Part shown: piece after piece, positions 11,372 to 58,426 of the stretch | How the letters are laid out: every line of letters starts with the position of its first letter | Numbering within the stretch: position 1 is the first letter of the stretch | Assembly (NCBI GenBank): GCA_023213395.1 | Contig: CM041465.1 | Span: forward strand, 229,593,741-229,657,740 | DNA length: 64,000 bases | Reading direction: 5' to 3' | Source of the DNA: Cycas panzhihuaensis | Lineage: Eukaryota > Plantae > Cycadophyta | Made by a program: the position numbers and the translations under genes | The notes under the pieces: model-generated | What the model saw: only the letters and a program-made list of their open reading frames with translations | Database searches by the model: none | Told to the model about the DNA's origin: nothing

Positions 11372-14300
11372 ATGGTTGCAATAAATATGCTAAATGCATG
11401 TACCATCAAATTAACAGGACAAGACAACTATCAAGAATGGAAAAGGATCACACAAAACCTCTTGATAATGAACGAATTTTGGGGTTATGTTTCTAGAAGA
11501 ATACCTCAACCTATACCTGTTGAAGATGATGGTGTAATTGTTCATCCTCATGCTGCTTGTGTTGCTGCTTGGGAAGCCAAAGATGAAATTGCTTTGGCAT
11601 TCTTACATATGATTATTGATGTTCATGTTGACCAAAATATTATGTGTGCAAAAACTTCCAAGGAAGCATGGGATATTTTGTCATCTTTGTATAAAAGGCG
11701 AGATGAAGCTCGTATTTTGATGGTAAAAGCCAAGTTGCATTCTTTAAAATTTGTCAAAGCTTATGTCGGCTTTTCTTTCCTCCATCAAGGAGGTATGTAA
11801 TGAATTGAATACATTGGATAGTCCTACTTCCAGAGATGAGCTTGTAACTACAATTGTCAAAGCATTACCTAAGGATTATAATGGATTTATTTCATCCACT
11901 ACATGAGATGGTTCACTTGGAAGAATGTCTTTTACTGAACTTGAAAGCTTGTTACTTCAAGAGGAGAATATTTACATCAACGACAATGATGATGAACCAT
12001 CCACTTCAGGGGCATCCACAACCAAATCAAAGGCCAAGCAAAATACCAAACTTGCACTTTCAAAACAGTTTGGAAATATGAACATTGGTTCCTCAAAGAC
12101 CAATGTTATTTGTCATTACTGTGGCAAAGTGGGCCACATAGCTCCTGATTGTATGAAGCAACAAGCTGATCTCCAGCACACACGATAGCAACAACAACCA
12201 TGTCGAGAATTCCGGTAATTTGTTTCAAAGAACAACAACAACAACAACAACCCCCTTGACCAAATCGACGTGCCTATCGAGGAGGTCAAAGAGGAAGGGG
12301 GGGTTGAGAGGTGGCAATCAACACCACTTCAATCAGTTTGTAGATGAGGACAAATTATTTTATGCTTGTCATAGATCCAAGGTTGATCAAACTTGGATCA
12401 TTGACTCAGGGGCTACTCAACACATGACTAGGAGTGAAGAACTCCTTTGTGACATCAAGGAAGGGAACGGTCAATCAGTGACCTTCAGCAACAATGAATG
12501 AATCAAGATTTCTGGCATAGGCACAATTGCCCCATTTCATTCTCCTTCCAATCCTTCCTCCACATTTCCCAATGGCAATGCCTATTTCATACCTTCCATG
12601 GAGAAGAGCTTGCTATCTGTTAGCAAATTGGACAAGTAACAGATGAGCATTTTGTTCAAGAATGGAAATGTGTAATAAGTGACAAAAATGACTAGGTAGT
12701 AGCTATTGGATATGAAGATCATGGCCTTTACAAGTTGGATGCTAATAATATAATACTTGATTCTGCTTACTCTGGTTCCATTGTCACTAAATCCTTGTCC
12801 AAGATGCAACTTTGGCATCAATGCCTAGGCCACTTGAACTTAATCAATCTCAAGCAGATGGTGAACAAAAATATGGTGCATGGGCTTCCAAAGATGTATG
12901 GTTCAAAATGTCTTTGTGAAGCATGCATAATGGGGACACAACATCGCTTGTCTTTCCCTAAAGGCAAAGCTTGGCGTGCATCGTATCCTTTGCAGTTGAT
13001 ACATTCGGATTTGTGTGGACCCATGTCCAACGCATCCTTTGGAGAAGCTTTGTATTACATCTCCTTCATTAACGATTTCTCCCATAAAGTTTGGGTTTAC
13101 TTCATCAAACATAAGTCTGAACCATTTCAAAAGTTTAAGGAATTCAAGCTTGAAGTGGAGAACAGGTCTGGCCAATCAATCAAATTACTAAGGACAGACA
13201 ATGAAGGTGAATTCACTTCAAAGGAATTCACCTAATTCTACAAGGATAACAGCATTCAGAGACAACTTACTATTCCTCATATTCCTCAACAAAATGGAGT
13301 CTCCGCAAGAATGAATAGAACTTTGGCTAACAAAGTCAAAGCAATGATGCATGCAAAGGGACTCACTCGAGCTTATTGGGCAAAGGCATTCCACATAGCT
13401 GCCTATGTGGCAAATCAGAGTCCAACATCAACAATCACCAACATCACACCAGAGGAGGCATGGTCTAGCAAAAAGCCAACTGTCAGCCATTTGGAGGACA
13501 TTTGGGTGCACTACTTATATGCACATCCCCAATCAGCAAAGAACTAAATTAGACAAGCATAGTCTAAAATGCATCTTTGTGGGTTATGCCATTCATAACA
13601 AAGCCTACAAGTTGTATGATCCTATTGAGAAGAAAATACATCTCTCAAGAGATGTAATCTTTGCTGAAAATGAACATAAGGAGTTGGATTCGGCATCCAT
13701 CCAACCTCCTATTGACAAAGGCAAAAAGATTGTTGAGGCTTTCCTTCCCTCTCAATCTTCAGCGCCAGGCACATCATCTGCACCTACTGGACTGTCCACA
13801 TCATCAAAATCAGCTCCACTTGATCCTAGTACATCTTCTATTGATCAACCACTTAGATCAAAAGATATTGAGGTTCAAGTTACATCAATCAAAAGCTGCC
13901 CAAATGGTATACTCAAATAGTTCAAGATGGCCAAATTGTTGAAGGAAAACGTCCATCAAAATACAAACATCAAACCAATTTTGCACTTATGACTGAAGTG
14001 CTTTGTGTTGATGAGCCTTCCACTTTTGAGGAGGCTTCTAAAAATGAAGATTGGAAGACCACCATGGATGAAGGAATCCATTCTATTAAGAAGAATGGAA
14101 CTTGGGATTTGGTTGAATTGCCTTAATACAAACAGGCAATCAATTGCAAATGGGTCTACAAGACCAAATTCCATTCTGATGGTACACTTAAGTTCCAGAA
14201 AGCCCGCCTTGTTGTAAAAGGCTTCAAACAAAAGAAAGGTATAGATTATGAGGAAACTTTTGCACCTGTTGCTAACATGAATACCATTAGACTCATCTTG

Positions 14301-15540
14301 GCCTTAGCAGTTCAATGTGAATGGCCAGATTTTTAAATGGACGTGAAGAGCACCTTTCTCAATGGCGATCTTCAAGAGGAGGTATACTTGGAGCAACCTC
14401 CTGGTTACAAAGTACAAGGCAAGAAGCACTTAGTTTGTCACCTAAAAAAGGCATTATATGGTTTGAAACAAGCTCCAAGAGCATGGTATTCAAAGATTGA
14501 TGATTATTTTTTAAGACATGGGTATCATCGATCTACTTCAGATCCTAACTTGTACATCAAAGTTGGGAAAGAACATGTTATTTTCATTGTCTTGTATATT
14601 GATGACTTAGTGATCACTGGCAATGACACTAAGATGGTACAGATTCTCCAGGATGACTTGAAGAGGAGTTTCGAGATGACAGATCTTGGACTTCTCCATT
14701 ATTTCTTAGGTTTTGAGGTATGGCAACAGCCAAGCTATATCTTCATCTCCCAAGCTAAATATTCTTGGGACATTTTGCAGTGGTTCAGGATGCATGACTG
14801 CAAACCAATGCCTACACCCATGGAGAATGGCACAGAGCTTACTCTCATTGAGGAAGTTGAACTAGTAGATCCCACTCTTTATCAGTAATTGATTGAAATC
14901 CTCATCTATTTCACCAACACTCGCCCTGATATCTCATTTGTAGTTGGGATCTGCTCCAGATACATGTCTCAACCCAATCAGAAGCATTGGAATGCAGCCA
15001 AACACATACTCAAATACATCAAAGGCATATTACACCATGGCCTTGAGTATGCACATGATGAGAACTTCACTCTGGAAGGGTTCTCAGATTCTAATTGGGC
15101 AGGTTGCCAGGATAGCAGGAGATCAACCTTGGGTTACTATTTTACCCTTGGTTCAACAGTTGTTTTGTGGAGTTGCAAGAAGAAACGCAATGTCACCTTG
15201 TCCTCCACCGAAGCAGAGTATAAATCTACAGTCAGCGCAGCATGTGAAGCTATCTAGCTACGACGGATTCTTCGGGAACTTGGACTTGAGCAGAATCACC
15301 CCACCAGGATATATTGTGACAATCAAAGTATCCTCAAGTTTGCCAAGAATCATGTTTTTCATGCAAGGACCAAACACATTGAGGTTCATCATCACTTCAT
15401 CAGAGAACATGTGCAGAGTGGTGAGATCAAACTTTAGTATAGACCTACAGAGCAGCAAATATCTTTACCAAGCCACTTGGTAGAGAAAAATTTGTAAAAT
15501 TTAGAGATGGTCTAGGGGTCTGACTTAACATTGTAAACAG
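11372..15540 (+). pseudogene. gag-pol: Copia gag-pol of D (many stops and frameshifts)
   Basis: KLTGQDNYQEWK, CHYCGKVGHIAPDC knuckle, WIIDSGATQHM protease, LIHSDLCGP integrase, LYIDDL RT, FSDSNWAG RNase H. Confidence 0.95.
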
Positions 15541-15550
15541 TAAGGGGGGG

Positions 15551-16099
15551 TGTTAAACCTTATGTTTACATGTTAAGCCCATGTGTTTTATTTTTCATGT
15601 ATTATTTGTACTTTTGTATTTTATGGGGTGACTTATCACTTAAGTGATAAAGTGCACACCCACATTCTTTCCTAGTGACACAACATTGTCACTAAAGGGT
15701 CAAATAGACCCCCATGCACTTTTTCTCACTTGAGAGCCCAAAAGGACACATGTCCTACATGCAAGGCATGTACCTTGGATGTTTGACACTTGTCAAACAT
15801 CCAATGCCTTAGGTCTTTTCTTTCACTCTATATATTGAGACCTTTTCTCATGGTTCTCATATAGAGTTGGAGTTGTATTATTATGCTGCCAGGTTGCTAA
15901 TCAAACTACTATTCATTTGGAGGTTGGACCAATTCCAACTTCTCACATTTGGTATCATTTTGCTCTCACTCTTTATGCTTTGATCTTGCTTATGTTGATC
16001 TCATAATTTCATTGTTAGTCTAGATTATTTGCTTTCTAGAACTAGAGTGAATCTATCTCCCAGATCTTGGATTTCAAAGGCCTTTTGGCCATTTCAACA
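15551..16099 (+). repeat. 3' LTR of D
   Basis: TGTTAAACC...TTTCAACA after the PPT. Confidence 0.95.
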
Positions 16100-18702: not shown

Positions 18703-19660
18703 TGTGTGTCGACTAATCTACCCTTGACAATTCATGGAAAGTTACAACAGAATAGATAGCATAGAATCACATTAAGCATGAAAACCAATCTTCAGTATGA
18801 GATGGCCTTGTGTCTAGTCCTCTCACAACTAGACGCAAGCCGAAGCAGGGTACAGCAAAAGAGCCACAATATAGATGGCTAGAAAAGAGAAACAACGACA
18901 CATGCACACACAATACATTTTCTAGAATATGCCCAATTTATTTAACCTTTTCAATTACATTCAATATATACAGTTATAACCATAACAATTTAGCCTTAAA
19001 CGACTAATTTGTACCATTGGATTACAATCCAATTGGATCTAATCAAAACTTATTACACCAATCATTGAAGTTGGTCGCACTTATAATCGTTCCTGGTCGC
19101 ACTTGTAGTCGCATTTGGTCGTACCTGAAAGACTAATGGAGAAGATACAAGCACCAGAATATCTTGAGGAACTAGATAGGGCATCGAAATATGAAGGACT
19201 AAACACTTTAAATTAATGAAAAGATGTAGTACAACACATAAAGATAATAGGAGGAGTATTGAACTTCAACTCAACCTATCATGAACATAAGTATGAAGGA
19301 GAATTCATCTCAACACTACACCTACAAGAGATACTTATAGCAGCATAACTCTAACTCCAATACTACATGCCAAAACATGAAAATAGGACTCCTTATAAAG
19401 GAGTTTGGATGATCAGGATCTTACCACATGTCACTGATCAACACTAAAAGACAAATCTGATTATGACTCTTCTTTCCTCAAGGATAAGGATAGAGCCCTC
19501 CAAAGTTGACTTCTCATAAGCACATGTGAGAAAAGCCACAACAAGACAAAAGATAATTTTATAATCAAACAAATGAACACTTTAGGATAAAGGCCTAAAG
19601 TGACAAAAATACTAATACCCTTGGTCAAGACTTAATGCTTAGGAAATGAAGGTTTTAACA

Positions 19661-22600
19661 CCCCACCTGAATGGATACAACATTAAGTCGAATGTTGAGG
19701 CCGTTTCTGAAATGCTCGAACTTCTCTTTCCCAAGTGGCTTGGTGAAGATGTCGGCTAACTGTTGATCAGTAGGCGACGAGGTCGATTTCACCTTGCTGC
19801 ACATGTTCTCTGATAAAATGGTGATGGACCTCAATATGCTTGGTACGTGCATGAAACACCAGATTCTTGGCAATCTTGATAACACTCTGATTGTCACAAT
19901 ACAATGGTGTCGAAAGTGTTTGCTCAAGTCCAAGTTCTTCAAGAATCCGTTTGAGCCAAATAACCTTACATGCTTTGTATTCTGCTTCAATGGAGAAAAG
20001 CATAACATTTGGTTGAATTTTGCAACTCCATAAAACAATAGTAGACCCAAGGTTGAAACAATAACCTGAAGTGGATTTCTAGCTATCTTGGAATTCAGCC
20101 TAATCTGAATCTGAGAACCCTTCCAGTGTGAAGTTCTCATTATGTGTGTACTGGAGACCATACTACAAAGTACCTTTGAGGTATCTGAGGATGCGTTTTG
20201 CAGTATTCTAGTGTCGTTGATTGGGGTTGATCATGTATCTGGAACATATTCCAACCACATAAGAAATGTCAAGTCTAGTGTTAGTCAAGTAGATAAGACT
20301 ACCCACTAGTTGCCTAAAAAGGGTGGAATAAACAGGTTTCCCTTCTTCATTCATCGACAATTTAGCACCTGTCTCCATGGGTGTTGGTGAAGGTTTACAG
20401 TCTTCCATTGTGAATCGTTGTAAAATATTCCACGTATATTTGGCTTGAGAAATGAAAATGTGACCTGGTTGGTGCCACACTTCCATGCCAAGAAAATAGT
20501 GAAGAAGTCTAAGATCTGTCATCTCAAAACTTCTTTTCAAATCCCTTTAGAGACGCTCAATCAGATCTACATCATTGCATGTGATAATCAAATCATCAAC
20601 ATAAAGAACAAGTGTGATGTGCTGGTTTTGAACCTTGATATGTAGGTTCAAATCAGATGTGGATCGATAAAAGTTGTGCTTAAGAAAGTAGTCATCAATC
20701 TTTGAATACCATGCACATGGCGCCTGTTTTAGACCATACAAGGCCTTTTTAAGGCGACAGACAAGATGTTCATTGCCGACAGAAATATATCCAGGAGGTT
20801 GTTCCAGGTAGACCTCCTCAGTCAAATCGTCGTTGAGAAAGGCGCTTTTGACATCCATCTGATACAATGGCCACTTGCATTGTGTAGCTAAGGCCATAAC
20901 AATTATGATGGTATTCATATTGGCCACTGGTGCAAATGTCTCAGTGTAGTCGATGCCTTCTTGCTATTTGAAACCTTTGGCAACAAGGCGAGCCTTATGT
21001 CACTCAATAGTACCATCAGACTTATACTTTATTTTGTAGATCCACTTACAACTAATGGCTTGGTTGCCAGGTGGTAACTCAACCAAGTTCCATGTGTCAT
21101 TTTGATAGATGGAGTGGATCTCTTCATCCATGGCAGCCTGCCACTTTTCGTTAATACATGCCTCCTCAAAAGTGGAAGACCTCAGAAGGAGTAAGCACTT
21201 CAGCCATAAGTGCGTAATTAACAGTGGGTGATGGCCGCATTTTGGATGGACGTTTGCCTTTAACAATTTGTGAATCTGTAATAGTTTGCATGTACCATTT
21301 TGGCAGCTTCTTTGTCGATGTGGCTTCATGGTCCTATGATGGAGGTGATTGTTGATCCTCAAAAGAAGAAGAAGAAGAAGAAGGACACAATGAAGGAACT
21401 GAGGAAGATGAGGAGGAAGAAGAAGCAGTAGGTGCAGATGAAGAACAAGGAGTTGAGGAAGCTGAAGGGACAAATTTTTCAATAATGGCTTTGCCTTTAT
21501 CAAGGGAGAGAGGAAGAGTGCTGATGTTGATCTCCCGATTGTCCTCTACAAAGACGACGTCTCTTGAAGTATGCATCTTTTTAGTAATGGGATCAAACAA
21601 TCGATATGCTTTACTGCCAAGAGCATATCCAACAAAGATGCATTTGAGACTTTTGTTGTCAAATTTCTGTCTTTGCTCGTGAGGAATGTTCATGTAGGTC
21701 ATGCATCCAAAAGTTCGTAAGTGGCTAACTGTTGGTTTCTGGCCAGTCCAGGCCTCCTCGGGTGTCATGCCCGAAAGTGCAGAAGTTGAGCTACAGTTTG
21801 AAAGATATGCAGCAGTAAGAAGTGCTTCTGCCCAATATGCTAATGAGAGACCTTTGTCATGCATCATATCTTTTGCCCTATTGACCAAGGTTATGTTCAT
21901 CCTTTCTGCCACACCATTTTGCTTCGGTGTGTATGGAACAGAAAATTGGCATTTGATGCCATTTTGAATACAGAATTGATTGAAGTCCTTGGACATATAC
22001 TCACCACCATTATCTGATCTAAGTATTTTGATGCGCATGCCTGATTCATTTTCGACCACAAGTTTAAATTCCTTAAACTAGTTCAAAGCTTTTGACTTAT
22101 GCTTAAGAAAGTAGATCCACACTTTATGTGAGAAATCATCAATGAATGTCATGAAGAATGATGATCCTCCATGAGATTGAGTGGTCATGGGACCACAAAT
22201 GTCAGAATGTACAAGCTATAACGGATATTGTGCTCTCCAAGCCTTACCTTTCTCAAAAGGTTCGCAATGCTGCTTCCCCAAAAGGCATGATTCACAAAGG
22301 TAATTACCCCCCAGAGATTTTGGGTAAGCCATAAACCATGTTTTGTTTGAACATCTGCCTAATACTGTCAAGATTAAGATGTCCAAGTTGTTCATGCCAG
22401 AGTTGAGTCTTGTTTACAGAATGGGAGACATAAGCATGAGATGATCCAGATGTCGTATCTAATTTGTAGAGGCCATGATCTTCATGACCAATTGCAACTA
22501 TCTGGTCGTCTTTGTTCCTGATTACACACTTTTTGTCTTTAATCAACACACTCATCTGTTGCTTATCAAGCTGACTAACAGAGAGTAAATTTTTTGGCAT

Positions 22601-23054
22601 TCCAAGAACTAAGAAAACATTCCCACTAGGAAATGTAGAATGCTGATCATGAGGTGTGATTTGATCTACACCTGATATTTCTACAGTGGCATTGTCCCCA
22701 ATTGTCACTGTTTTTCCCTTACATTCTTGAAAATTTGATAATATGTTTGCATCACTTGTCATGTGGCATGATGCACCAGAGTGAATGATCCAAGTGTTAT
22801 CATTATGACTACCACTTTATGCAAAAAAGGTCATGTCACTTGGATCATGTTGAGTTGTGTGGCCTTGAAGCCACCACGATTTGTCCTTCTCAAAATGCAC
22901 TTTGAGTTGGTCCTTGTTGCTACTAACGTTGTTACTGCTACTGACATTGATCTTGTTGTCATTGAATTTGTTGTTGTTGTGGTTGTTGCAAGTCATGTTG
23001 ACATTTTCTGCACTCAGGCTGAATGTGGCCAACTTTGCCACAATAATGATAGAT
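19661..23054 (-). pseudogene. pol: G pol plus gag zinc knuckle (rest of gag missing)
   Basis: HYCGKVGHIQPEC, LRSDNGGEY, LYVDDL, PLYCDNQS, QLADIFTK. Confidence 0.93.
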
Positions 23055-23457
23055 GACAGTCTTTGAAAAGAAGCCGAGGAGTTTTCTCTGAAGATAGAAG
23101 GATTTGCAGGCACTTCAATTGATTTGACGAGTAACAAATATGCAGTCTGCCTTATGCAGAGTGCTATAGAGGCCATCAATTTGGAATGTGGGTTGGTCAG
23201 CTTGGTGATGGTTGAGCTATAACACTTGGAGAAATCATAAATAGGAAAGGTGAGAGATGGGAGCTTCAACTAAAAAATGTCGGTAAAACTCCATACAGTC
23301 ATTTTGCCGATGGCCATGCAGTTATTCGTAGCAGCATTCGAGAACTCTTTTGTAGCAAAGTAATGGAATGCCTTGGCATTCTAGTAATTCGTGCTCTTTG
23401 CTTTGTGACCACTGGCAAAGGCGTCGTACAAGATATGATTTATGACAATAATCCAAA
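23055..23457 (+). pseudogene. SELENOO: Captured fragment of host selenoprotein O / protein adenylyltransferase (SelO, YdiU/UPF0061 family), permuted order, antisense to G
   Basis: 23147-23457 reads [102 protein letters not shown] (SelO signature GHQFG..GQLGDGRA, ELQLKG.G.TPYSR, RSS.RE); 23055-23145 reads DSL*KEAEEFSLKIEGFAGTSIDLTSNKYA. Confidence 0.93.
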
Positions 23458-24189
23458 CTCTAACTCCAATACTACATGCCAAAACATGAAAATAGGACTC
23501 CTTATAAAGGAGTTTAGATGATCAGGATCTTACCACATGTCACTGATCAACACTAAAAGACAAATCTGATTAGGACTCTTCTTTCCTCAAGGATAAGGAT
23601 AGAGCCCTCCAAAGTTGGCTTTTCACAAGCACATGTGAGAAAAGCCACTACAAGATAAAAGACAATTTTATAATCAAACAAATGAACACTTTAGGATAGA
23701 GGCCTAAAGTAACGAAAATACTAATACCCTTGGTCAAGACTTAATGCTTAGGAAATGAAGGTTCTAACAATACCTGGTCGCGCCTGCGGTCCACTTAGTC
23801 GCACCCAGTCACACCTACAGTCGCATCTGGTCGCACATGGTTGCACCCACAATCCATCTGGTCACACTCGTTGCACCAGCAATCGCATCTAGTCATACCT
23901 GGTTGCACCTATAGTCATGTTTGGTCGCACCCAGTTGCACCAACAAACCTATTACTACAAAATTCTAAATTATTTAATGTGCCTATTTTCTCTGCACACA
24001 TCTCTCTCGCGGCTTGTTTAATGAATGACCTCACTCGTTCCAAAATTTTCAAAATTTTTCCTCCATCTTTCTACCTTCCCTCCAAAATCTTTGAAATTTT
24101 TAGTCTGCTCATCCTTGTCGCGACTTCCTTTGTGCTTCTTTTATTTTTATCTTTTCATGTCTAATATATTCTAAATCCAGTCAAGCAAT

Positions 24190-37998: not shown

Positions 37999-38200
37999 AG
38001 ACAGCTAGAAAAGAGGAACGACAACACACACGCACATATACTACATTTTACAGAATACAGCTAATTTATTTAGCCTTTTCAGTTACATTCGGTATATACA
38101 GTTATAACAATAACGATTCAACCTTAACCGACTAATTTGTGTTGTTGGATTACAACTCGATTAGATCTAATCAAAACTAATTACACCAATCATTGAAGTT

Positions 38201-38436
38201 GGTCGCACTTATAACTGTTCTTGGTCGCACTTGTAGTCGCGTCTGGTCGTACCCGGTCGCACCTGCGGTCCATCTAGTCATACCTGGCCGCACTTGATCA
38301 CACCTACAATTGCATATGGTCGCACCTGGTTGCACCTACAATCCATCTGGTGGCACCCGGTTGCACCTGCAATAGCATCTAGTCGTAATTGGTTGCACCT
38401 GCAGTCACGTATGGTCGCATTTGGTTGTGCCTGCAC
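38201..38436. repeat. Degenerate array of about 10-bp units (GGTCGCACCT-like) in the F LTR; sister array 19073-19125 plus 23775-23942 split by G
   Basis: Many GGTCGCAC/GTTGCACC units in both LTRs. Confidence 0.85.
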
Positions 38437-38495
38437 ACCTATTACTACAAAATTCTGAATTATTGAGTGTGCTTATTTTCTCTACACACAACACG

Positions 38496-42408: not shown

Positions 42409-43472
42409 TGTTAGAAATAATGTTTAATGTGTAATATGTGTGGGTCCTAGGATAATAAGTGATAGTCCTAAGTCTTAGGGTCAAAAGGTCATTATAATAC
42501 TATGTAAAAGGATATAAGTTTATTGGTCAAGTTAGTGGTGTAATGCTATTGGTCACGACAAAGGTATTTGTCCCACATGCATTACTTGGGATGTATAGTC
42601 TCCCAACTCTTTGGTATATAAAGGTGGTTGAGGTAGTATGTAATGACATCACATCATCAAGGCTCATATCGAGTCTTTGGTGCTTTTGGTATGTTAATAC
42701 ATTCTGATTATATTGTGTTAATCATTGATATTATTGATCTTGTTGATGAGTGTTCTCCATGTTAAAAACTTAACATGGTATCGAAAGGTGTTGTGTGTTG
42801 AGGACATTGAAGTGTTGGGTCAGCTGACAGATTGAAGATTTAAGAGGTCCTTCTGGCTGTCTGAGAGAAGGTTCACCACTTGTTGATCTGCATGGAGGAG
42901 GCTCTATTAAAACGTTTGACAGTTTGTGGTTCTACTTGCAAAGGGTGAATCTACAAGGCCATTATTGTTGCATACTGTGCCACGCAATGATCGATAGAAT
43001 CTTACCGGGTAATATCACTCTTTACTTTGTTAGCCCTGTGAAGAAATTTGTTCAGCTTGTACAGTATAAGTGAGATTTTGCACAATAAATATTTGTTAGG
43101 GTCTGTACTGAAAATCACTAAGGCTCTGGACGGTGGAGATTGAAAAAAGTTGCCCAATTCTGATTCTATATGAATAAAATTTATGAATGAACCCTGCTCA
43201 CTTGCATAGCAACACTACTAATTGTTGCATCACCAGTCAGAGATTGTGTTGTAGTTGTTATCCCCTGCTAGTTGAGTGTTTCATGCAAACGGGTGAATCA
43301 TTGAAAGACTGAATCAAAATTGTAGAAGGCTCAAGCATGATTCACTGTGGAATACACAGTAACAAAAGAATGATGGAATGACGATGGTGAAACCTTGACT
43401 GTAACTGTAAAGCTGGTTACTCATCTATCCTATAGAGCCAAATCCCAACTCTGTGATAAAGAAAGTCCGCTA

Positions 43473-43841
43473 CTATGCAGACTCAATCGACTTATGGGCA
43501 CAGCGTCGGACCCTCCTGTTGTATGCCTGAATATCATTCTGATACAATTGAGCTGCTTCAGGATTTGCAGGACTAGCCGGATTAGGGTCCGTAAGTAGAG
43601 ACTGAATTGATGTTAGTATGGTACAAACATTATGGCAGGGTGACCAGGCATCTTGAATTATGTCCATACACAGAGTTCCATCATGGTATACTTCCCACGG
43701 AGTCTCATAGGGTCCAAAGATAGTGGCGCCCCAAACGAATAGATTTTCTTCCGCATGCGGGCTAGCGCTACACCCCTCAGGAGGCTCGTTCCTAATTGCC
43801 TTCAGATCAGACATCAGCCGAAGCTACTCAGAGGACGACAT
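43473..43841 (-). pseudogene. Processed, internally deleted RAD6/UBC2-like E2 ubiquitin-conjugating enzyme copy, antisense to C
   Basis: MSSSE*LRLMSDLKAIRNEPPEGCSASP..LFVWGATIFGPYETPWE|VYHDGTLCMDIIQDAWSP..ILTSIQSLLTDPNPASPANPEAA; no introns; lacks the GG..YP..PP.VRF..FHPN segment; TAG at 43826-43824. Confidence 0.92.
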
Positions 43842-45345
43842 TCTAATCGCCAGAACGAGGGTTTCAATTAAGACTCCGTTAAAAGGTGGGATTCCCGAGC
43901 ACAAGTAGCACTAGGTTACCCACCGTGAAAATCCACGAGATGTTGAAACTAGTTTTGTTGGCAGAAGCCTGTCAGATCTTTAAAAGTTCACTTGTATGCC
44001 TTTGCCGTTTCGAGGGTCTTTGAAATACGTGCAGAACCCCTCAACAAAACGCAAATACAAGGACTCATACGAATCGAACCTCTCCTCCTCCCCACTGCAA
44101 ACACGATTTTCAGAAGAACAACGCGAGGACGACCACAGAGCAGAGCTTCCCTGTCTGTGAGATGGATCGCCCGATCTGTGTTTAGTTGAGCCAGCGAGAA
44201 GTCTACATGCAGGAGTCTCACTAGAGGATAAATTTCGATTCATTGCAGGTTCTTTTGTGTGCTTAAGAGTGAGTTACCTATTCAGAACCACCATTTTTCT
44301 GTATGTGTGAAGATTTACCTGTGCAGGATCACCATTTTTCTGTATGTGTGAAGATGGTTCCATAGAGCCAAGCGCAAGTTGTGGATCCATTTACAGAGAT
44401 TCCAGCCAGGATCATAATTAATGCAAAATAGATCATTACTAGTTGCAGCCTCCAGTTGCCAAACAAAGATCTGTAGACACACCTGTGTGTGATTGAGGAA
44501 GATGCACTATCGTCCAGCCATGCAAACGAAGGAGACACCAAACCCTATCACTGTCACATGATCGCAAAGAACCTGTAGACATGGAATAATTTTCAGCTGT
44601 CAAGGTTGAGCTTGCAGCCGTGGAGATTGAGTAGGTGCAGCCTCTGTTGCTCATTAGGTGCACTAGCAAGTTGTGAATAAATGTAGCAGTCAAAACTGTT
44701 GAATCTGTAGCGTGAAGAAGGACACCGGATAGGGCAATGGTTGAAGTTACAGTGTTTTAAAATGTCGAGTTAATCTGCCTCGGTGGAGACCAAGTTGCAA
44801 CTGGTGATTGCGCCTCATTTTGAGTTTACAGAGTTACCATGAATGGAGTGAAACCAGACGTCTAGCGAAGGCATAAATAGAAGGAAATTGCAGATCACCT
44901 CGTTGTTAAATCGCCACTCGCAGAGTCATTGATATGTTCGGCCTTATTTCATACGAGTTCAGAGGTATTTCTTAATAATACTTCGCCTTCCTTGAGTCGT
45001 TTGTGCAGGCTACATCAATCTTGGACCCTGAGAGTTCTAGCCAGAAGTGGACAGCCACCTTGAGATGCCGTAGAGAGCCTAAGCAAAAAGGTGAGATCAA
45101 AAGACCACCTTCTTGCTGCACGCACCTTTTCCTCTGCTGAGGCACAGATCCTGGAGACAATCATAAGTGGCATTCATGGAGAAAGCAATCATAACCACCC
45201 TCCTGACTTATAAGTAGAAATGCGTTGGGTGACAAATCAGAGAATGAAACATTACCCAGTATTCAGGTTTTAGTATTTTCTCCGTTGATTTGATAGATCT
45301 TCTTTTGGCCGAAGTGGATACATTTTTCTGATCCTCTCATACATC

Positions 45346-46837
45346 ATGGAGTTGAGTGACGCCATAGTCTTTCTGCCTGAAAGAAATGAATATTGGCTAT
45401 CAGATCTTTGTTTTCCTCTGCCCAAATACACTGGAACTAATTTTCGTTTTTGGAAAATTAGGATGGAAAGTCTATTTGTAGTGAAGAAACTTTGGAAAAT
45501 AGTCATGGGGACTGAAATGGCTCACGAAGAAGGGGAGGTAATCTTCAAAAGGAAAATGTAATTGTTATTGACGTGATACTTGCGACCATTGATAAAGATA
45601 ACCTCCCATCCGCCTATCACTTCATTATTCAGTTCTACGTAATATGGACTCTACCGAGGATGCTTGGAAACTCGATGTAAGTGAATGAAAAAGGACCTGA
45701 AGAAATACAGCAGCAGAGAATCAAAAGGGCAAAGAATCAGAGGAAGAAGTTGAAGAGGAAAGGAAAAGGGGAAAAGCAACGTGACAAAGCCACAAGTCTC
45801 ATCAAGGAACCAGTTCTGGAGGTTGAGGATTTCAGGCATCAATCTTTACCGATAACAGTTCGTGGTGACATGAGTTGCCCAACGAAAGGTATGGATAATG
45901 TTATCCTAGTTTGTGTTGATAGGATGGTAGGAAGAATTCAATTGGTGACAGGTCATACAGTGATTTGCGTGTATTAGAAAATATCCATGATCTCCCTCAA
46001 CTCAGTTACATTCTCCACTCTCATCCTTGAGAAGATCAAGATTATAACAGCATATCCTAGAGCGACACTAGAAAGTTGTTCTCAAAGGAACATAAGGAGG
46101 ATATCATGTCACCAGAATCTTGCTTATCGAATTCATATTCCCTTTTGGATAGGTTACCTGATTATGAAAGTCAATCAGATTGAAATAATGTTCCATGTAT
46201 GCATATCCATAATCAGGAAGCATATGCATGAGAGTATCATAGAAATACTCATTATACTTAGTTCATGGAACCCTTTGAGTGAGACAGAGAAAGCAAGGTA
46301 CATCACACGGATTACAGGAACTCGACTCAATAAATCCATTGCTTGTGGGAGGATAATGATGTCTTACGGTTGGTAACTCATTCTTTGCATTTGGATAATG
46401 ATGATATTGCTAACATCTACTTTGGTCACTCACATACTGAAGAAGAGAGAAGCAAACAGGTGATAGAAGACATATTTGAAAGACACCTTGAAGATATCAT
46501 TGATAAATATATGCAGGATCATTTTGAATTATCCATGTTTCACTACTTGCTTTGCATGTCCAAGGATTCTCAATTATGTATGAAGTTGAAAGAAGCAAAG
46601 CTCGAATATCGTCAGTTAAAACGACAGCTTCAAAAAGGACACCACAAGGTTGAAGACCAAGACCATGCCCAAAACATGGTGTTCAAGACCCTTCCAAGAT
46701 CAAGGCGGTGGAGATTCAAAAGAGACAAAGTGCATCGTAGTCCTGCTGATCATATTGTCTTTAATGTCTCAAATTCATGTCAAGTGTCAATGTATGTCAA
46801 ATTGTCCTTAGTTCAAACATTAAACATTAAGGGGAGG
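45346..46837 (+). pseudogene. Family ORF of C: copia Gag N-terminus fused to an unknown domain (stops and frameshifts)
   Basis: KYTGTNFRFWKIRMESL..KLWKIVMG motif; collinear similarity to 59200-60886. Confidence 0.8.
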
Positions 46838-47215
46838 TGTTAGAAATAATGTTTAATGTGTAATATGTGTGGGTCCTAGGATAATAAGTGATAGTCCTAA
46901 GTCTTAGGCTCAAAAGGTCATTATAATACTATGTAAAAGGATATAAGTTTATTGGTCAAGTTAGTGGTGTAATGCTATTGGTCAGGACAAAGGTATTTGT
47001 CCCACATGCATTACTTGGGATGTATAGTCTCCCACCTCTTTGGTATATAAAGGTGGTTGAGGCAGTATGTAATGACATCACATCATCAAGGCTCATATTG
47101 AGTCTTTGGTGCTTTTGGTATGTTAATGCATTCTGATTATATTGTGTTAATCTCTGTTGATATTATTGATCTTGCTATTGATGAGTGTTCTCCATGTTAA
47201 AAACTTAACAGAGAC

Positions 47216-51061: not shown

Positions 51062-54000
51062 TTTTCAAGTGATTTTTCAGTCATTTATGTACTAATTGTG
51101 AAAAATTCACATTGTACTCAATTTTATAAGGCTCTCTACAAGGTGACCTTTATGCCCTAAGTCTTAAAAAAGGGCTCAAAATCACTCGTTTTAATAAAAA
51201 ATCATTTTATTTGGGGTTGGTTAGGACTATTTTAAAATCCTAAAATTGTGGTTGTGGATTGATCTCTTGGTGCACTTCATTAAAATTTGCATTTTGTTGT
51301 CGTTTATTTGCATTAAAACAAAACCGGTCAAGGCACAACATGTAAGCAAGCATATCTTCAAATGACACTAAACACCTTTTTGCTCTTTTAAAGTTTTTGT
51401 TTTTTTTTGGAACACTTTGTGTTATTTTATGTACTCAAATTACTTCAACTGAAACCTTTTATTGAGTTTTTATCAGCATTATAAAATAGCATTTTATCAC
51501 TTACTTAAGCAAATTACTCTAAGTCCACTTAAATCATTAAAAATTGCTTTAAAAATTTTGTTAGAGAGACCCAAAAAAGGTTAAAACCTTGCCTCTAGAA
51601 ATATCAAGCTTGGTGTATTCCCTAGGAAACCAACCAACCGTACAATCAGTGCATGATAATTGAGATTCTTTTGGAGAAAAGGGAGATCAAAAAGACTATT
51701 ATTGGGGTTGTGAATCCCAAGGAAAACATGGTATAGCCATGCAGATCAACCTTACCTAGCCTTGTCCTAAATTTGACTTGGCTAACTATTATCTAGAAAG
51801 ATTAGGGTTAGACCAACTCTTTGCCTAGTCCTCGACCCCTTATCACTCTATTTAGTTGTTGGATCTTCTTTGTAAAATTAGGGTTGTTGGTGTGTTAGAA
51901 GGTGGAACTTAAATGACGAAAGCTTTGAGTTTCTAAGTTATCTGCTAGCTTCAAGAACCTTAAACAACTTTAACATTATGGCTACTCTTAATATGCTTAA
52001 TGCATGCACTATAAAGTTGAATGAAAAAGATAATTTTGAAGAATGGAAAAGACAAACACAAAATCTGTTGATCATGAATGAGTTTTGGGCATTTGTATTG
52101 GGGAAGAATCCCAAATCTATTCCAACTACAAGCCCAATTAATAACATTGTAATCATTCGGCTTAATCCTCCTTTAGTTGCTGCTTGGGAAGCTAAGGATG
52201 AAAAAGCCTTAGCATTTCTTCATATGGTAGTTGATGTAAATGTTGATTAGAACATTTGTTGTGCTCGTATTTCAAAGGAAGCTTGAAACCCCTTAATTTC
52301 ATTGTATGAAAGGTGAGATGATGCTCGCATTATTATAACAAAAACTAAGATGTATACTTTGAGGTATATTGAGCCTATGTCGACATTTGTGTCTTCTATC
52401 AAAGAAATTAGTAATGAGCTAAATACTTTTGGGAAACCAACTTCGAAGAATGAACTTGTAACTGCCACATTGCATGCATTACCAAAGGAGTACAACGGTT
52501 TCATCTCTTCAATTACAAGAGACGGCACACTTAGCACTTTAACTTTCATTGAACTTGAAAGTCATTTACTTTGAGAGAAGTAAATCTATTCTGGACATGA
52601 TGAACCATTAACATTAGGTGCATTCACAGCCAAGTATAAGGCCAAGTAAAATCCCAAACAATCTCTTTACAAACAGCTTCGGAATATGAACATTGGCACA
52701 TCAAAAGCCAATGTCACATGTCATTATTATGGCAAGATGGGTCGCATTGCACCTAAATGTCGGAAGAAGCAATCTAACATATAGCAACAATAGTAGTTCC
52801 AACAACTACAACAACTGTAAATGCAACAACAACCACGTCAGCAACAGAATTAGCAGCAACAACAACCCCCTAAACCAAATCGACGTGGATTTCGAGGAGG
52901 TCAAAGAGGAAGGGGCAGCTTTAGAGGTGGCAACCAATGCCATACAAATTAGTTTCCTAATAAGAAAAAATTGTTTTGTACTTATCACAACTCTCAAAGT
53001 GATAGCACATGGATCATTAACTTGAGAGCATCTAGACACATGACAGGTAATGAAAACTTGCTCTATAATATCAAAGGAGGAGGACAAACAATTACGCTTG
53101 GCAATAATGAATCAGTTGAGATATCTGTAGTAGGAAAAATTGTTTCTTTTCATTCTCCAAATCACCCTACTCCCACATTTCCCAATAGAGATGCCTACTT
53201 GATACCTTCAATGCATAAAAGTCTCTTATCTGTTAGGCAACTAGATAAACAACAGATGAGTATATTGTTTAAAGGTGGAAAATGTATCATTAGTGACAAA
53301 TATGATTAAGTGGTTGCCATTGGTCATGAAGACCATGGCCTTTAAAAATTGGATGTATCAAATATTACACTTGATACTGCTCTAGCTTATTCTGTCATAC
53401 AAACCATGATCAAAGAACAACTTTAGCGTAATAGACTACGCCACTTAAGCCTAGATAATATCAAAATGATATTTAACAAAAACATGGTGTATGGGCTTCC
53501 AAAAATATCAACATCAAAATGTCTTTGTGAAGCATGTATTATGGGGACACAACATAGAGGACCTTTTTCTGAAGACAACGCATGGCATGGATCACAACCC
53601 TTATAGTTGGTTCACATAGATCTATGTGGACCTATATCCACATCATCTCTTGGAGAAGCCTTGTACTATATCACCTTCATTGATGATTTTTTGCATAAGG
53701 TTTGGATATACTTCATCAAACACAAATCAAAGGCATTAGAAAAGTTCAAAGAATTCAAACTTGAGGTGGAAAATGAGTCAAAATCTTCAATCAAAATGTT
53801 GAGATTCAATAATGGAGGTGAATTTACCTTAAGGGAGCTTAATCAATTCTACAAAGCCCATGGAATCAAAAGACAACTCACTGCTCTGCATACACCTCAA
53901 CAGAATGGAGTATCCAAGCAGATGAATAGGACTTAGGCCAACAAAGCCAAAGCGATGATGCATACAAAAAGGCTACATCTTTCCTATTGGGTACAAGCAT

Positions 54001-54952
54001 TCCGCATAACAACTTATGTGGCCAATAGGAGTCCAACTACAACAGTCATTGATATCATACCAGAGGAGGCTTGGTCTAACAAAAAGTCAACTATTAGCCA
54101 TTTGAGGACCTTTAGGTGCACTACTTATATGCACATTCCCCAACAACAAAGAAAGAAGTTGGATCATAATAGTCTCAAATATATTTTTCTTGGTTACTCT
54201 CTTAATAGAAAAGCTTATAAAGTATATGATCCCATTTCCAAGAAAATGCATATATCTAGAGATGTAATCTTTGCTGAGGATAATGAGGAGTTGGAACTAG
54301 CATCTATCCATCCTCCTCTTGAAAAAAGCAAGAAGATTGTTGAGGATTTTCTTCCCTCACAATCTTCCACACCATGTTCATCATCTGCTCTCGTTGCTTC
54401 TTCGTCTAATTCAAATACAACTCCACTTGATCCTAGTACTTCTTCTGTTGATCAACCATTATAGCCCCAGGATATTGATGTTCAAGTTATATCCATGAAG
54501 AAGCTACCCGAATGGTATACTTAAATGGTAAAGGACAATCAAGTCATTGAAGGAAAAAGTTCATCTAAAATGAGGCAGCAAACAGTTAACTATGCACTTA
54601 TGGCTGAGGTGCTTTGTGTAGACAAGCCTTCCACTTTTGAGGATGCATGTGAAAGTGAACAGTGGAAAGTTTCCATGGATAAAGAAATCCATTCTATTGA
54701 AAGGAATGGAACTCGGGATTTGGTAATTGCCTAAGAACAAACAGGGAATCAGTTGTAAATGGATATATAAAACCAAATTCCACTCTGATGATTCAATCAA
54801 GCATCATAAGGCTCAACTTGTTGCAAAGGGATTTAAACAAAAAGAAGACATTGACTACGAGGAGACCTTTGCACCTATGGCGAATATGGACACCATCAAA
54901 CTTATATTGGCCTTAGCTACTCAATACAAATGGCCAATCTATCAGATAGACG
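51062..54952 (+). mobile_element. Truncated D-family copia E (part of leader, gag from 51978, PR, INT, start of RT); no LTRs seen
   Basis: MLNACTIKL gag start shared with D; VHIDLCGP; ends at YQIDVK. Confidence 0.88.
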
Positions 54953-57900
54953 TGAAGAGAACATATCCAATTTTATCTAAGACATTAAGTTAGAGGTTAA
55001 TGAGGGCTATGTGCCATTCCCTCTTCTTTGTAATAGTGACAAGTGGTAGACAAATGGCTTACATGTAGCAAGTGGTTACAAAACATTTCATGTATTTAAA
55101 GAGAGATACTCTCTCACATAATCAACAATCTTTCTTCAGTCAAGTCTACTTTCTTTCATGGTATCAGAGTAGGGCAAATAGCTTGTCCAATAAAATTTTG
55201 TAAAAAGCCTATTTATGAAATAACTGAGTGTGTCTGAGACAGATAGCAAGCCATTCATTAAATCCAAGATCAGTGAGTAAACCAAATGAAGTACAGAAAA
55301 GAATCTTCATGTATAGACCTTTATGGAATTGTATGGCATTGTACTGACGTGGTATGAACCAGAAAACTCAAAGTGCTCAGAATCTCGCAAATTTTCACCA
55401 AGAGGTGCATTTTGATAAGGTCGTCATTTCCTCCAACAGGATCGAGCCCATTTGAGCTCTCTTTTACGTAGTTTTGGCCCACTTTAGTGTGCACGGTTTG
55501 GAGGTTCCTCTGTATTTTTTACTCAAATCGCTCAAATTTTCCTGGTAATACCAAACAAAATCTGTTCTCCTATTTTGTCTACCTCATTTGAATCCACTTT
55601 CAAGTTTTTTGATTGAGTTTTTGAAAAATATGAGCATTTAAAAAAAAAAAAACCCTAACTGTAGTTTGTCTTTTTCGAGTCAGATTCAAAGCGAACAAAG
55701 ACTTTGCAAGATTTTTACATATCTAAAATCCTCACATTGTAATCTCTCTTTTGCACCCCTTTTCATTGTCATCTGTACAACTATACTTTCGTACAAAATT
55801 TCATACAATTGTACGATTAGTCAGCTTGGAGTCCAGAAAATTAGCCTGATAACTTCTGTTTGTTTCTCAAAATGGCCTCCTCCATTCTTGCTTTGAATGA
55901 CCAAGATAAAATGACTAAAACGAACTATTTTGTCTAGAAAATTAAGGTAGAAACCTTGTTGAGAGAAAAAATGTCTGGAACATAGCTAAAAGATTAGAAA
56001 AAAGGTCAACTAATGCTCCTAATTAGCCTAACTGGGATGAGAGAAATAACTCAAGAATAATTATGAAATTGTCCATCTCAAATCCTCTTTTGGTGTATGT
56101 TGAAAGATTGAACTCATGTCAAGATATTTAGAAAGCGTTTTTCAATCATTATAACCAAAAAAGTCAGGCCAAGATCGTAGCCTTAAAAGAGGAATTGTTC
56201 AAATTACACATAAAAGAAAAAAGAGCATTTTAAAATTTATTCATAAAGTGACTTCAATCAGGAATGATTTAATTAGTGTAAGAGCCAATCTACTTGAACA
56301 TGAGATTGTCGAAATGATTGTAAATAAGCTCACAAAATCCTTTGATAACATGGTAAACTCCATAACCAATAATGATGAGACTGCTACCATGTCTTTTGAA
56401 ACTTTGACAAGACTTCTTCTCGGGCAAGAACAAAGGAATAGGAGATACGAAGAGGAGACATAAATTGAAGAGGCTTTCTTATCCAAACTTAACCTCGGTT
56501 CCAGAGGATGAGGACAGTCAGTCTCAAAAGGTCGAGGAAGGACTCCTGATACCAGAAGTCAATTTAGATGAAGATGGCAAGAAAATAAAGGTAAAGGACA
56601 ATCAATTCTATGTAGAGATACTAGAGTCTACTTCACATGTGGTAATCCTGAGCACTTCTCTAGCAGTTGCAGAGCATTGGTGTTAGAGTATAATGTCTAA
56701 TGTTGTGTATGGTTAAGTAAAGTGTGTCCTAGGATTTATAGTCATAGTCCTAAGTCTTAGAGTCCAAGAGTCATTATAATATTGTGTGAGAAGATAGAAG
56801 CTTGTTGGTCAAGTTAGTTGATATAATGTCATTGGTCATGATAAAGGTATTTGTCCCACATGCATTACTTGTATTGTATGTCCTCCCACCTATTTTGTAT
56901 ATAAAGGTGGTTGAGGTAGTATATGTCATCAAGTCATCATGGAGACTCATGTTGAGTCTATGATGCATTAGTGTTATGCTTATGTTAATGGAATGCAGGC
57001 TATGCTTTGGTTATCGATCTTGTGATTGTATTTGGAGTTGGATGCTTTCCATGTTAAAACCTAACATGGTATCAGAGCAGGTTGCTTGTTGAGGGCATTG
57101 TGGTGCTAGGTCACCAAATTTTAGCCAAGGAAGGAAGTAGCTTTGTTGAGTCAGCTGCTAGATTGAGGATTCGGATTGTGAAGGTGAGATCCCAAGGTCA
57201 TTAATATTGCAAGGTGTGGATTGTGGTGATGCAAGGCAAAATTTTACCAGCTGATTAAGAATTGTTGTAAGAAGGAGATCGACTGAGGAGGTGTCTTAAA
57301 GCATTTTACCAGGTAATACTATTATTCTATATTGTTATGTGAAGCAAGCTTTGTGTCGGGTTTATCATGTGAAGAAATTAGTTGATGTGATGAAATCTAA
57401 AATTGATGATGCTAAGAGAATTTGATTGGAATATTGATTCTACACCTTCAAGGGTTTGTGTTGGAAATAACTAAGAGTTAGATTGGTGAACTTGGAGTCA
57501 GTTTTCTGTCAGTCACATGAAAATTTATTGTTAATAAAGGAAAGAGAATAACTTACATAAAGTTGTGATTGATAAATTTGTGAAGCTTGTTGTGATAGAA
57601 TTATAAGTTGCTCACAGAAAAATAAAAGTCATGGTGTGGTGTTAAAAACTGTGTACGACTTATGACAAAACCCTAGCAAGAGTTGAGCAGTAATAGATCA
57701 AATAGCCATGAGAGCATCTGGACTCAGCCATGGAAGACTCCATGTATGAGAAGTATTCAGTCCTGCATAATAAAGGAGATAGTTCTGTCTTGCATGTAGT
57801 AAAGAAATTGTATTGCCCAATCGAAAGAGCCAACTCTTGACAAAAAAAGGGAGTTGTAGAAACCTGCAATAGTAGCCGTGGAAAGAGGAAACAAGAATCG

Positions 57901-58404
57901 CCATTGATCAAAGCTGTTAAGGGCTCATCCAATAGTCGTCTACATACAACTATCAAGAGTAGGTTTAATCCTTTATTCTATTGAGATTATGATGAATAAT
58001 GACCTTTTGTGAAACTATGCCTATGCAGTCTACTATTTGTGCATATTGTTGTGTCTCCTGTGCACAAATACAGTAGAAATCCATACCGATGCAACATGAA
58101 GAGATAATCAACCATCTCTAGATTTCATTATATAAAGGCGGAGCTGAGTACCTTCCAACCATGAATGTCAGTCGTTAGAGCAGGGAGTCGAAGACAGCTG
58201 CCCAGTACAAACACTGCGCGGAAACTCCTATTCTCTATGTAGATGGCAGCTTGTGGATGGCAATAGTCCCAGCTGTACCAATCAATCGGATCCGTTAACT
58301 GCCTCAAACTATGTCAAGGCTGCAGTAGATGATGCAGACATCTTTCTATGAATAGGAGTTCGATCACAAGAAGAGATGGCTACCATCTAACGATCTGTAG
58401 AGAG

Positions 58405-58426
58405 AGGGAGCTCCCTTTCAGCCCAT
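58405..58426 (+). promoter_or_regulatory. Candidate miR319-complementary site with a 1-nt central bulge
   Basis: AGGGAGCTCCC-T-TTCAGCCCAT vs miR319 complement AGGGAGCTCCCTTCAGTCCAA. Confidence 0.35.

What the first reader, a model, noticed from the sequence alone, without database searches (positions are those of the whole stretch)
23055..23457. Genomic fossil of a probable circular RNA: SelO segments joined in back-spliced order inside a copia element
Seen: two SelO-like segments abut. 23055-23145 encodes ...SIDLTSNKYA plus one G, and from 23146 one T is followed by [13 protein letters not shown]...DMIYDNNP. Known: in plant SelO proteins DLTSNKYA lies roughly 70 residues downstream of DMFYDGNPK, so the order here is permuted. 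The junction reads TATGCAG|TCTGCCTTAT, where the left part ends in a typical exon-end CAG and the reading frame changes across the join, which normal splicing would not do. Inference: this is a back-splice junction, and about 400 nt of a roughly 0.5-kb SelO circRNA was reverse-transcribed and fixed in the genome. CircRNA-derived pseudogenes are described in mammals; I am not aware of a plant case captured by an LTR element. The ORF track misses it because of the stops at 23064 and 23213.
Basis: partly seen in the sequence, partly recalled or inferred. Interest (0 to 1): 0.93.

Follow-up and report, generated by a model that had tools for sequence, protein, structure and literature searches.

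The report
Permuted SelO exon copy inside copia
A decayed 391-base copy of two exons of a plant SelO gene, joined end-to-start exactly at their splice borders as in a circular RNA, sits backwards inside a broken copia retrotransposon; this would be a plant example of a circular-RNA-derived pseudogene, so far described in mammals.

Summary
Window 23146-23445 is one complete SelO exon ("X", 300 nt, no indel). It is preceded at ~23067-23145 by the last 76-79 nt of the next exon ("X+1") and followed at 23446-23457 by the first 12 nt of X+1.

The parental gene could not be fetched. Exon borders come instead from an intron-bearing plant-type SelO contig (L002) and about 20 raw ORFs that read into introns. 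The join 23145|23146 is, to the nucleotide, the donor end of X+1 joined to the acceptor start of X. The X/X+1 intron is absent. The pieces form one 391-nt arc of a 548-nt two-exon circle.

A back-spliced SelO RNA is the best source (about 0.6). A linear RNA with repeated exons is not excluded, but it would be frameshifted.

- The insert is antisense in a copia element (19126-23769, 5-bp target duplication).
- It replaces the last 221 bp of the 5' LTR, the primer site and the gag capsid domain.
- It looks several-fold more decayed than the LTR pair, so direct capture by this copy is doubtful.

First-stage notes list other back-splice-like fragments in this genome; I could not test them. Interest is moderate to high.

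The parts
19121..19125 (.). Target-site duplication, left copy (GTACC)
   Evidence: Both flanks are collinear with an uninterrupted paralogous site at 38004-38490.
19126..19660 (-). Complete 3' LTR of the copia element (535 bp, TG...CA ends)
   Evidence: Bases 19347-19660 are 96.2% identical to 23456-23769. The ends were read.
19661..19668 (-). Polypurine tract (aggtgggg) directly upstream of the 3' LTR
   Evidence: Read directly.
19669..22762 (-). Broken copia pol, in the copia order GAG-pre-integrase/protease barrel, integrase, reverse transcriptase, RNase H end
   Evidence: Pfam gag_pre-integrs and Pol_BBD at 22304-22762, rve and SH3_retrovirus at 21334-22059, RVT_2 at 20547-20927. The ORFs are fragmented.
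22800..23066 (-). Remnant of the gag C-terminus with the zinc knuckle (first Cys now Tyr). The gag capsid domain upstream of it is missing.
   Evidence: Alignment to another copia at 12040-12200. That copia has Retrotran_gag_2 upstream of its knuckle; this element has none.
23067..23145 (+). Piece A: the last 76-79 nt of SelO exon X+1, ending on the exon's final G
   Evidence: The exon end ...NKYA + G followed by a GT intron is seen in L002 and in 14 raw ORFs.
23145..23146 (+). Permuted join: last base of exon X+1 next to the first base of exon X. It shifts the reading frame.
23146..23445 (+). Piece B: the whole of SelO exon X (300 nt, no indel, TGA at 23213). It is 70.3% identical in DNA to exon X of L002.
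23446..23457 (+). Piece C: the first 12 nt of exon X+1 (10 of 12 match L002), so the X/X+1 intron is absent. The last two bases (AA) are shared with the LTR.
23456..23769 (-). Truncated 5' LTR. The first 314 bp are kept; the last 221 bp and the primer-binding site are missing.
23770..23774 (.). Target-site duplication, right copy (ATACC, one mismatch to the left copy)

Best explanation
The 391-bp insert (about 23067-23457, + strand) is a decayed DNA copy of one continuous arc of a 548-nt circular RNA made by back-splicing two adjacent SelO exons (X, 300 nt; X+1, 248 nt).

Shown:
- The arc runs from position ~170 of X+1 to that exon's end, across an exact donor-to-upstream-acceptor join, through all of X, and across the normal X/X+1 splice into 12 nt of X+1.
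- Nothing outside these two exons is present, and there is no poly(A).
- The copy lies antisense inside a Ty1/copia element that integrated normally (TG...CA ends, 5-bp target duplication).
- It replaces about 1 kb of the element: the last 221 bp of the 5' LTR, the primer-binding site and leader, and the gag capsid domain. The LTR junction shows a 2-nt overlap and the gag junction at most 2 nt.

Inferred:
- The template was circular, rather than a linear RNA with repeated exons.
- Because the element's sense strand carries the first-strand cDNA of SelO, there are two candidate routes. A polymerase extending the element's plus strand may have switched onto the SelO RNA and back. Alternatively, a free cDNA or an older DNA copy was used as filler when a deletion was repaired.
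- The SelO part is about 5 times more decayed than the LTR pair. The reverse-transcription event therefore probably predates this copy's integration. The cargo was either inherited from a progenitor element or copied from an older pseudogene.

The fragment has no coding function now.
For: Exon borders:
- L002 is an intron-bearing plant-type SelO contig. It gives exon X as ag|A-TTG-CCA...TAT-GA|gtatgt and exon X+1 as ag|C-GGT-AAT-CCA...GCA-G|gtaaac.
- Six raw ORFs read into the introns at the X borders, and 14 do so at both X+1 borders.

The window against these borders:
- It aligns exon by exon with no gap, and the join falls exactly at 23145|23146.
- In L002, exon X-1 ends in ...TC, not ...CAG, so shared bases do not hide a nearby template switch.
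- Only exons X and X+1 are present in the window.

Other support:
- 548 mod 3 = 2, so a linear repeat of the two exons would be out of frame.
- AT5G13030, which I take from my own knowledge to be the Arabidopsis SelO gene, is in a pool of candidate single-copy nuclear genes (PMC4491267).
- Element anatomy.
- Mammalian precedent with LTR-rich flanks: PMC4897178.
Against: - This genome's own SelO gene was not seen. The exon borders are inferred from other plants.
- The arc is shorter than one lap, so it cannot separate a circle from a linear RNA carrying X, X+1, X, X+1.
- Evidence for the missing intron rests on 12 nt, of which 10 match and 2 are shared with the LTR.
- Piece A is strongly SelO-like only in its last ~30 nt.
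- Age mismatch: 13 of 56 near-invariant SelO columns are changed (about 0.11 substitutions per site, CI 0.06-0.20), against 0.020 per lineage for the LTRs (CI 0.010-0.034). This argues against a simple capture by this copy.
- A search with the chimeric ORF found no second copy (this is a weak negative).
Confidence: 0.6

Rival explanations
1. The template was a linear SelO transcript with repeated exons (X, X+1, X, X+1). It came either from a genomic tandem duplication of the two exons in the parent gene or a paralog, or from trans-splicing between two pre-mRNAs. The fragment then reached the element in the same way as in the main explanation.
For: It gives the same exact exon-end to exon-start join and the same intron loss. 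The heavy decay of the insert would fit a source that was already a non-functional paralog. Assembled SelO proteins with internal repeats of this region exist in other organisms (P0001, P0008).
Against: The repeat unit is 548 nt, so such an mRNA is frameshifted and stops 24 codons after the join. That would inactivate a gene that sits in a pool of candidate single-copy nuclear genes (AT5G13030). A random 391-nt sample of a roughly 2-kb mRNA would often include other exons, and none is present. From general knowledge, exon repetition by trans-splicing is rare.
Confidence: 0.2
2. The order is a patchwork with no permuted RNA behind it. Two separate pieces of ordinary spliced SelO cDNA were joined by template switching or end joining, and the breakpoints fall on exon borders by chance.
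For: Patchwork filler and RT template switches are common (general knowledge; PMC13317346). The outer junctions of the insert are of this kind, with 0-2 nt of overlap.
Against: Both breakpoints would have to hit an exon end and an exon start to the nucleotide, with no lost or added base. My rough estimate for two independent hits in an mRNA of about 12 exons and 2 kb is 1e-4 to 1e-5. In L002, exon X-1 ends differently from exon X+1, so shared bases cannot mask a nearby switch.
Confidence: 0.05
3. The permuted SelO copy is real, but this copia element did not capture it. After integration the element suffered a deletion of about 1 kb. Repair copied 391 bp from an older SelO pseudogene, or from the cargo of another element, elsewhere in the genome. 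This is a rival only for the route into the element; it overlaps the main explanation on the origin of the join.
For: The insert is several-fold more decayed than the LTR pair. C-to-T loss alone does not explain this. The 5' LTR is cut and there is no primer site, so this structure could not have been copied by retrotransposition. Both outer junctions show only 0-2 nt of overlap.
Against: No donor copy is known (searches were blank, but those blanks are weak). A second copia-type element in this window also carries an antisense intronless host gene piece in its leader. First-stage notes list more such cases. Together these hint at a replication-linked route.
Confidence: 0.35

Closest known systems
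CircRNA-derived pseudogenes of mouse and human (Dong et al. 2016, Cell Res, PMC4897178)
   Same: A processed gene copy with an exon-exon junction in reversed order. Sequence is confined to the exons of the circle. There is no poly(A) tail. In mouse, LTR sequences are enriched in the flanks.
   Different: This case is in a plant. There is a single known copy. It lies inside a copia element, antisense, replacing the LTR end, primer site and gag, rather than merely near LTRs. No parental circRNA has been observed. Full-text searches found no plant case, but the library is incomplete.
Host-gene capture by plant LTR retrotransposons (abnormal template switching; rice and sorghum surveys reviewed in PMC13317346; maize Bs1 from my own knowledge)
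   Same: An intronless host gene fragment lies between the LTRs of a retrotransposon. Co-packaged RNA and RT template switching are the usual explanation.
   Different: The captured RNA shows a permuted splice junction. The element kept pol but lost part of its 5' LTR and its primer site, so it cannot have multiplied in this form. Amplification as a family has not been shown.
Filler DNA at repaired double-strand breaks in plants
   Same: A deletion of about 1 kb is replaced by about 0.4 kb of foreign sequence, with 0-2 nt of overlap at both junctions.
   Different: Filler is usually copied from nearby or ectopic genomic DNA. Here the sequence ultimately derives from a spliced, permuted RNA.
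Retrozymes (plant non-autonomous retroelements that propagate through circular RNAs; PMC4918200, listed)
   Same: They involve a circular RNA that is reverse-transcribed with the help of LTR-retrotransposon enzymes in plants.
   Different: By that paper's title and abstract, retrozymes carry hammerhead ribozymes. The insert here consists of host protein-coding exons. I ran no ribozyme scan.

Membership tests
circRNA-derived pseudogene | A non-colinear junction that joins the 3' end of a downstream exon to the 5' start of an upstream exon, exactly at the exon borders | tested here: met
   23145|23146 matches the donor end of exon X+1 and the acceptor start of exon X, as seen in L002 and about 20 intron-reading ORFs. 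The borders come from other plants, not from this genome's own gene.
circRNA-derived pseudogene | Internal introns absent (a processed copy) | tested here: met
   Exon X is followed directly by 12 nt of exon X+1, 10 of which match. L002 has a 294-nt intron at this point. This is short evidence.
circRNA-derived pseudogene | Sequence confined to the exons of the circle, with no poly(A) tail | tested here: met
   Only exons X and X+1 are present. Both ends abut copia sequence with no A-run.
circRNA-derived pseudogene | The parental gene makes the corresponding circRNA | not testable with these tools
The literature search on AT5G13030 gave no circRNA report.
circRNA-derived pseudogene | The parental gene has no tandem duplication of the exons concerned | not testable with these tools
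Indirect argument: the repeat would shift the frame (548 nt).
Ty1/copia LTR retrotransposon (the host element) | Two LTRs with TG...CA ends, a 5-bp target-site duplication, and a polypurine tract | tested here: met
   The 5' LTR is truncated to 314 of 535 bp.
Ty1/copia LTR retrotransposon (the host element) | Integrase upstream of reverse transcriptase, with copia-type domains | tested here: met
   gag_pre-integrs, rve and RVT_2 occur in that order on the minus strand.
Ty1/copia LTR retrotransposon (the host element) | A primer-binding site next to the 5' LTR and a gag capsid domain | tested here: not met
   Both are replaced by the SelO insert. The element is defective and cannot replicate in this form.
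SelO / UPF0061 protein family (origin of the insert) | A significant match to PF02696 with conserved residues intact | tested here: inconclusive
   The Pfam match is clear. However, there is a stop codon and 13 of 56 near-invariant columns are changed. The insert is SelO-derived, not a functional SelO.

The most novel reading that the evidence does not exclude
In this plant genome, copia-type particles repeatedly copy host RNAs, including exonic circular RNAs, onto the element's plus strand near the 5' LTR and leader. This leaves antisense cargo in that position. Retrotransposon leaders would then be a readable archive of past circular RNAs, and the SelO fragment would be one of several such fossils. 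Unverified first-stage notes report FtsH7/9, VAC14, CDKB and APC1 fragments as further cases.
Probability: 0.25. Interest if true: 0.8.

Novelty: new member of a known kind. Interest (0 to 1): 0.6.

Why it matters
CircRNA-derived pseudogenes show that circular RNAs can be reverse-transcribed and inherited. They are documented in mouse and human, where the route is unknown but LTR elements are suspected. A plant case lying physically inside a copia element ties the event to an LTR-retrotransposon setting. It also offers a concrete handle on the route: the antisense orientation, the junctions in the LTR and gag, and the short overlaps. If the other candidates noted in this genome hold up, a genome-wide count of permuted exon junctions inside and outside LTR elements, with their orientation, would test whether retrotransposon particles package and copy circRNAs. 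It would also show that back-splicing of conserved genes in plants goes back a long way. The fragment itself has no coding function.

Tried and rejected
Tools that gave nothing:
- The single metagenome scan returned 79 intronless loci that look bacterial (continuous alignments) and one useful plant-type contig, L002.
- A protein search with piece B found nothing closer than 65% identity. The representative search topped out near 70%. The parent and the species remain unknown.
- A search with the chimeric minus-strand ORF (22820-23269) was blank, and so was the findings search by sequence. Neither blank means much.
- Literature searches found no plant circRNA-derived pseudogene and no circRNA report for AT5G13030.

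Ideas rejected:
- Cytosine deamination in a methylated element explains the excess decay. A/T sites at codon positions 1-2 changed as often as CHH cytosines, so it does not.
- The LTR breakpoint marks the transcription start. A TATA-like box lies at 19397-19392, which puts the expected start roughly 20-25 nt before the breakpoint. That is close but not exact, and it was not tested.
- A SelO RNA served as the minus-strand primer. This would not leave the complete 3' LTR that is observed.
- The true LTR is only 314 bp. The TG...CA ends and the empty paralogous site require 535 bp.

Full report
**What is in the sequence.**
On the + strand, the frame ending at 23144 reads ...SIDLTSNKYA, followed by a single G at 23145. 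From 23146 a single T is followed by [13 protein letters not shown]...DMIYDNNP, with a TGA at 23213. Pfam SelO (PF02696) matches 23216-23458 at E=2e-17 and 23147-23212 at E=6.5e-5, covering profile positions 67-161. tblastn with plant and bacterial SelO proteins aligns 23147-23446 as 100 residues without a gap, at 60-71% identity. No other SelO-like stretch exists in the 64 kb. In plant SelO proteins DLTSNKYA lies about 78 residues after DMFYDGNP (P0151).

**Exon borders.**
Two indirect sources gave the borders.
- Raw ORFs from plant assemblies read into introns. Six ORFs begin their SelO homology at (M/L)PYAQCYGG, after a residue encoded by the acceptor AG plus one exon base. They leave homology at DMFY|EYV, which is TATGA|GTATGT. 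Fourteen ORFs begin at ...S|GNPK and leave at ...DLTSNKYA|G, which is GCAG|GTAA.
- One locus from the metagenome scan, L002, is an intron-bearing plant-type SelO fragment. Exon X is L002:526-825 (300 nt). An intron occupies 826-1119. Exon X+1 is 1120-1367 (248 nt). Exons X-2 and X-1 lie upstream, and X-1 ends in ...GGATC before gtaagt.

**Exon-by-exon comparison.**
- 23146-23445 aligns to exon X over all 300 columns without a gap, at 70.3% identity.
- 23446-23457 matches the first 12 nt of exon X+1 at 10 of 12 positions. There is no GT where the intron would start, so the intron is absent.
- The stretch up to 23145 matches the 3' end of exon X+1, with 21 of the last 27 nt identical. A weaker match to the variable linker runs back to about 23067.

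The join 23145|23146 is therefore the last base of exon X+1 next to the first base of exon X, with no base lost or added. Exon X-1 ends differently from exon X+1 in L002, so shared bases cannot hide a nearby template switch. My rough estimate for two random breakpoints both hitting exon borders exactly is 1e-4 to 1e-5. I conclude that splicing made the join. The three pieces form one continuous 391-nt arc of a 548-nt two-exon circle. The missing arc is about 157 nt from the middle of exon X+1.

**Circle or linear repeat.**
The arc is shorter than one lap, so the sequence alone cannot tell a circle from a linear RNA carrying X, X+1, X, X+1. The linear form could come from a tandem exon duplication or from trans-splicing. 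Three points argue against it.
- The unit is 548 nt (mod 3 = 2). The join shifts the frame and a stop follows 24 codons later.
- AT5G13030, which I take from my own knowledge to be the Arabidopsis SelO gene, is in a pool of candidate single-copy nuclear genes.
- No exon outside the unit is present.

I put the circular origin at about 0.6, the linear repeat at about 0.2, and a chance patchwork at about 0.05.

**Context.**
The insert lies in a Ty1/copia element on the minus strand, at 19126-23769.
- Its flanks (18878-19125 and 23771-24000) are collinear with an uninterrupted paralogous site at 38004-38490.
- The ends are TG...CA and a 5-bp duplication flanks the element: GTACC on the left and ATACC on the right.
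- The 3' LTR is complete (535 bp) and is preceded by a polypurine tract.
- The 5' LTR keeps only its first 314 bp, 23456-23769, which are 96.2% identical to the 3' LTR.
- Gag homology to another copia reaches about 23066, just past the zinc knuckle. That other copia has the Retrotran_gag_2 capsid domain upstream of its knuckle; this element has none.

The SelO arc thus replaces about 1 kb: 221 bp of the LTR, the primer-binding site and leader, and the gag capsid domain. The overlap is 2 nt (AA) at the LTR junction and at most 2 nt at the gag junction.

SelO is antisense to the element, so the element's sense strand carries the first-strand cDNA of SelO. This fits two routes. In one, plus-strand synthesis switched onto a SelO RNA and back. 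In the other, a cDNA or an older DNA copy was inserted during repair of a deletion. A switch during minus-strand synthesis onto the RNA would give the opposite orientation.

**Age mismatch (unexplained).**
In 56 columns that are at least 95% conserved across 48 SelO sequences, the window has 13 changes, including a stop. This implies about 0.11 substitutions per site (CI 0.06-0.20). The LTR pair differs at 12 of 314 sites, or 0.020 per lineage (CI 0.010-0.034). The excess is not confined to C-to-T changes. The insert therefore looks roughly 2-6 times older than this copy's integration. Three explanations remain open:
- The cargo was inherited from a progenitor element that still had a full LTR and primer site, and this copy was truncated later.
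- The 391 bp were copied from an older pseudogene.
- The source RNA came from an already decayed paralog.

A search with the chimeric ORF found no second copy, but that blank is weak.

**Comparison with what is known.**
CircRNA-derived pseudogenes are defined by a reversed exon-exon junction, by sequence limited to the exons of the circle, and by lack of poly(A). They are described in mouse and human, and in mouse LTR sequences are enriched in their flanks (PMC4897178). All the sequence-level criteria are met here. The criteria that need the parent gene or RNA data could not be tested. Plant LTR retrotransposons are known to capture host gene fragments by template switching (PMC13317346). I found no plant report of a circRNA-derived copy, but the library is incomplete.

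In the same window, a second copia-type element carries an antisense, intronless UQ_con (RAD6-like) fragment between its primer site and gag. First-stage notes list further permuted fragments in LTR elements of this genome. I could not reach those windows, so they remain leads and are not counted as support.

**Verdict.**
The join is a genuine splice-type, permuted exon junction in a processed copy. A back-spliced SelO RNA is the best explanation. How and when the copy entered this copia element is open, and direct capture by this copy is doubtful. This is a new member, in plants, of a kind known from mammals. Interest is moderate to high. It would rise if the other candidates in this genome are verified.

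Noticed in passing
window 42409-47210 (element C); cargo at 43476-43814 (-): This is a second copia-type LTR element. Its LTRs are 42409-42775 and 46838-47210 (96.5% identical). A PBS-like tggtatcgaaag follows the 5' LTR, and a gag DUF4219 domain lies on the + strand at 45346-45558. Between primer site and gag it carries an antisense, intronless UQ_con (RAD6-like E2) ORF (Pfam E=6e-26, matched in two stretches, with part of the domain missing in the middle). So antisense host-gene cargo in a copia leader recurs within this window.
   Followed up: partly
window 56679-61350 (element I): This is a sister of element C. It has a perfect initiator-Met-type primer site (tggtatcagagc) right after the LTR at 57067. 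It shares the LTR and about 47 bp of leader with C (about 73-78% identity), and then the leaders differ. That fits a variable cargo position downstream of the primer site.
   Followed up: partly
window 18878-19125 with 23771-24000, against 38004-38490: The SelO-bearing copia inserted into a repeat rich in GGTCGCAC-like units. An uninterrupted paralogous copy of that repeat lies 14 kb away in the same window. This allowed the insertion borders and the target duplication to be read.
   Followed up: yes
proteins P0001 and P0008: These two assembled SelO proteins, which by their sequences look non-plant (my reading; no taxonomy was available), carry an internal tandem repeat of the same conserved region (the ...[11 protein letters not shown]... 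segment). The cause could be a real duplication or an assembly artefact. I did not look further.
   Followed up: no
window 12093-15561 and 52994-54959: Two further copia-type elements lie here, about 66-68% identical in pol to the SelO-bearing one. The one around 11372-15561 keeps its gag capsid domain (Retrotran_gag_2) and an intact zinc knuckle.
   Followed up: partly
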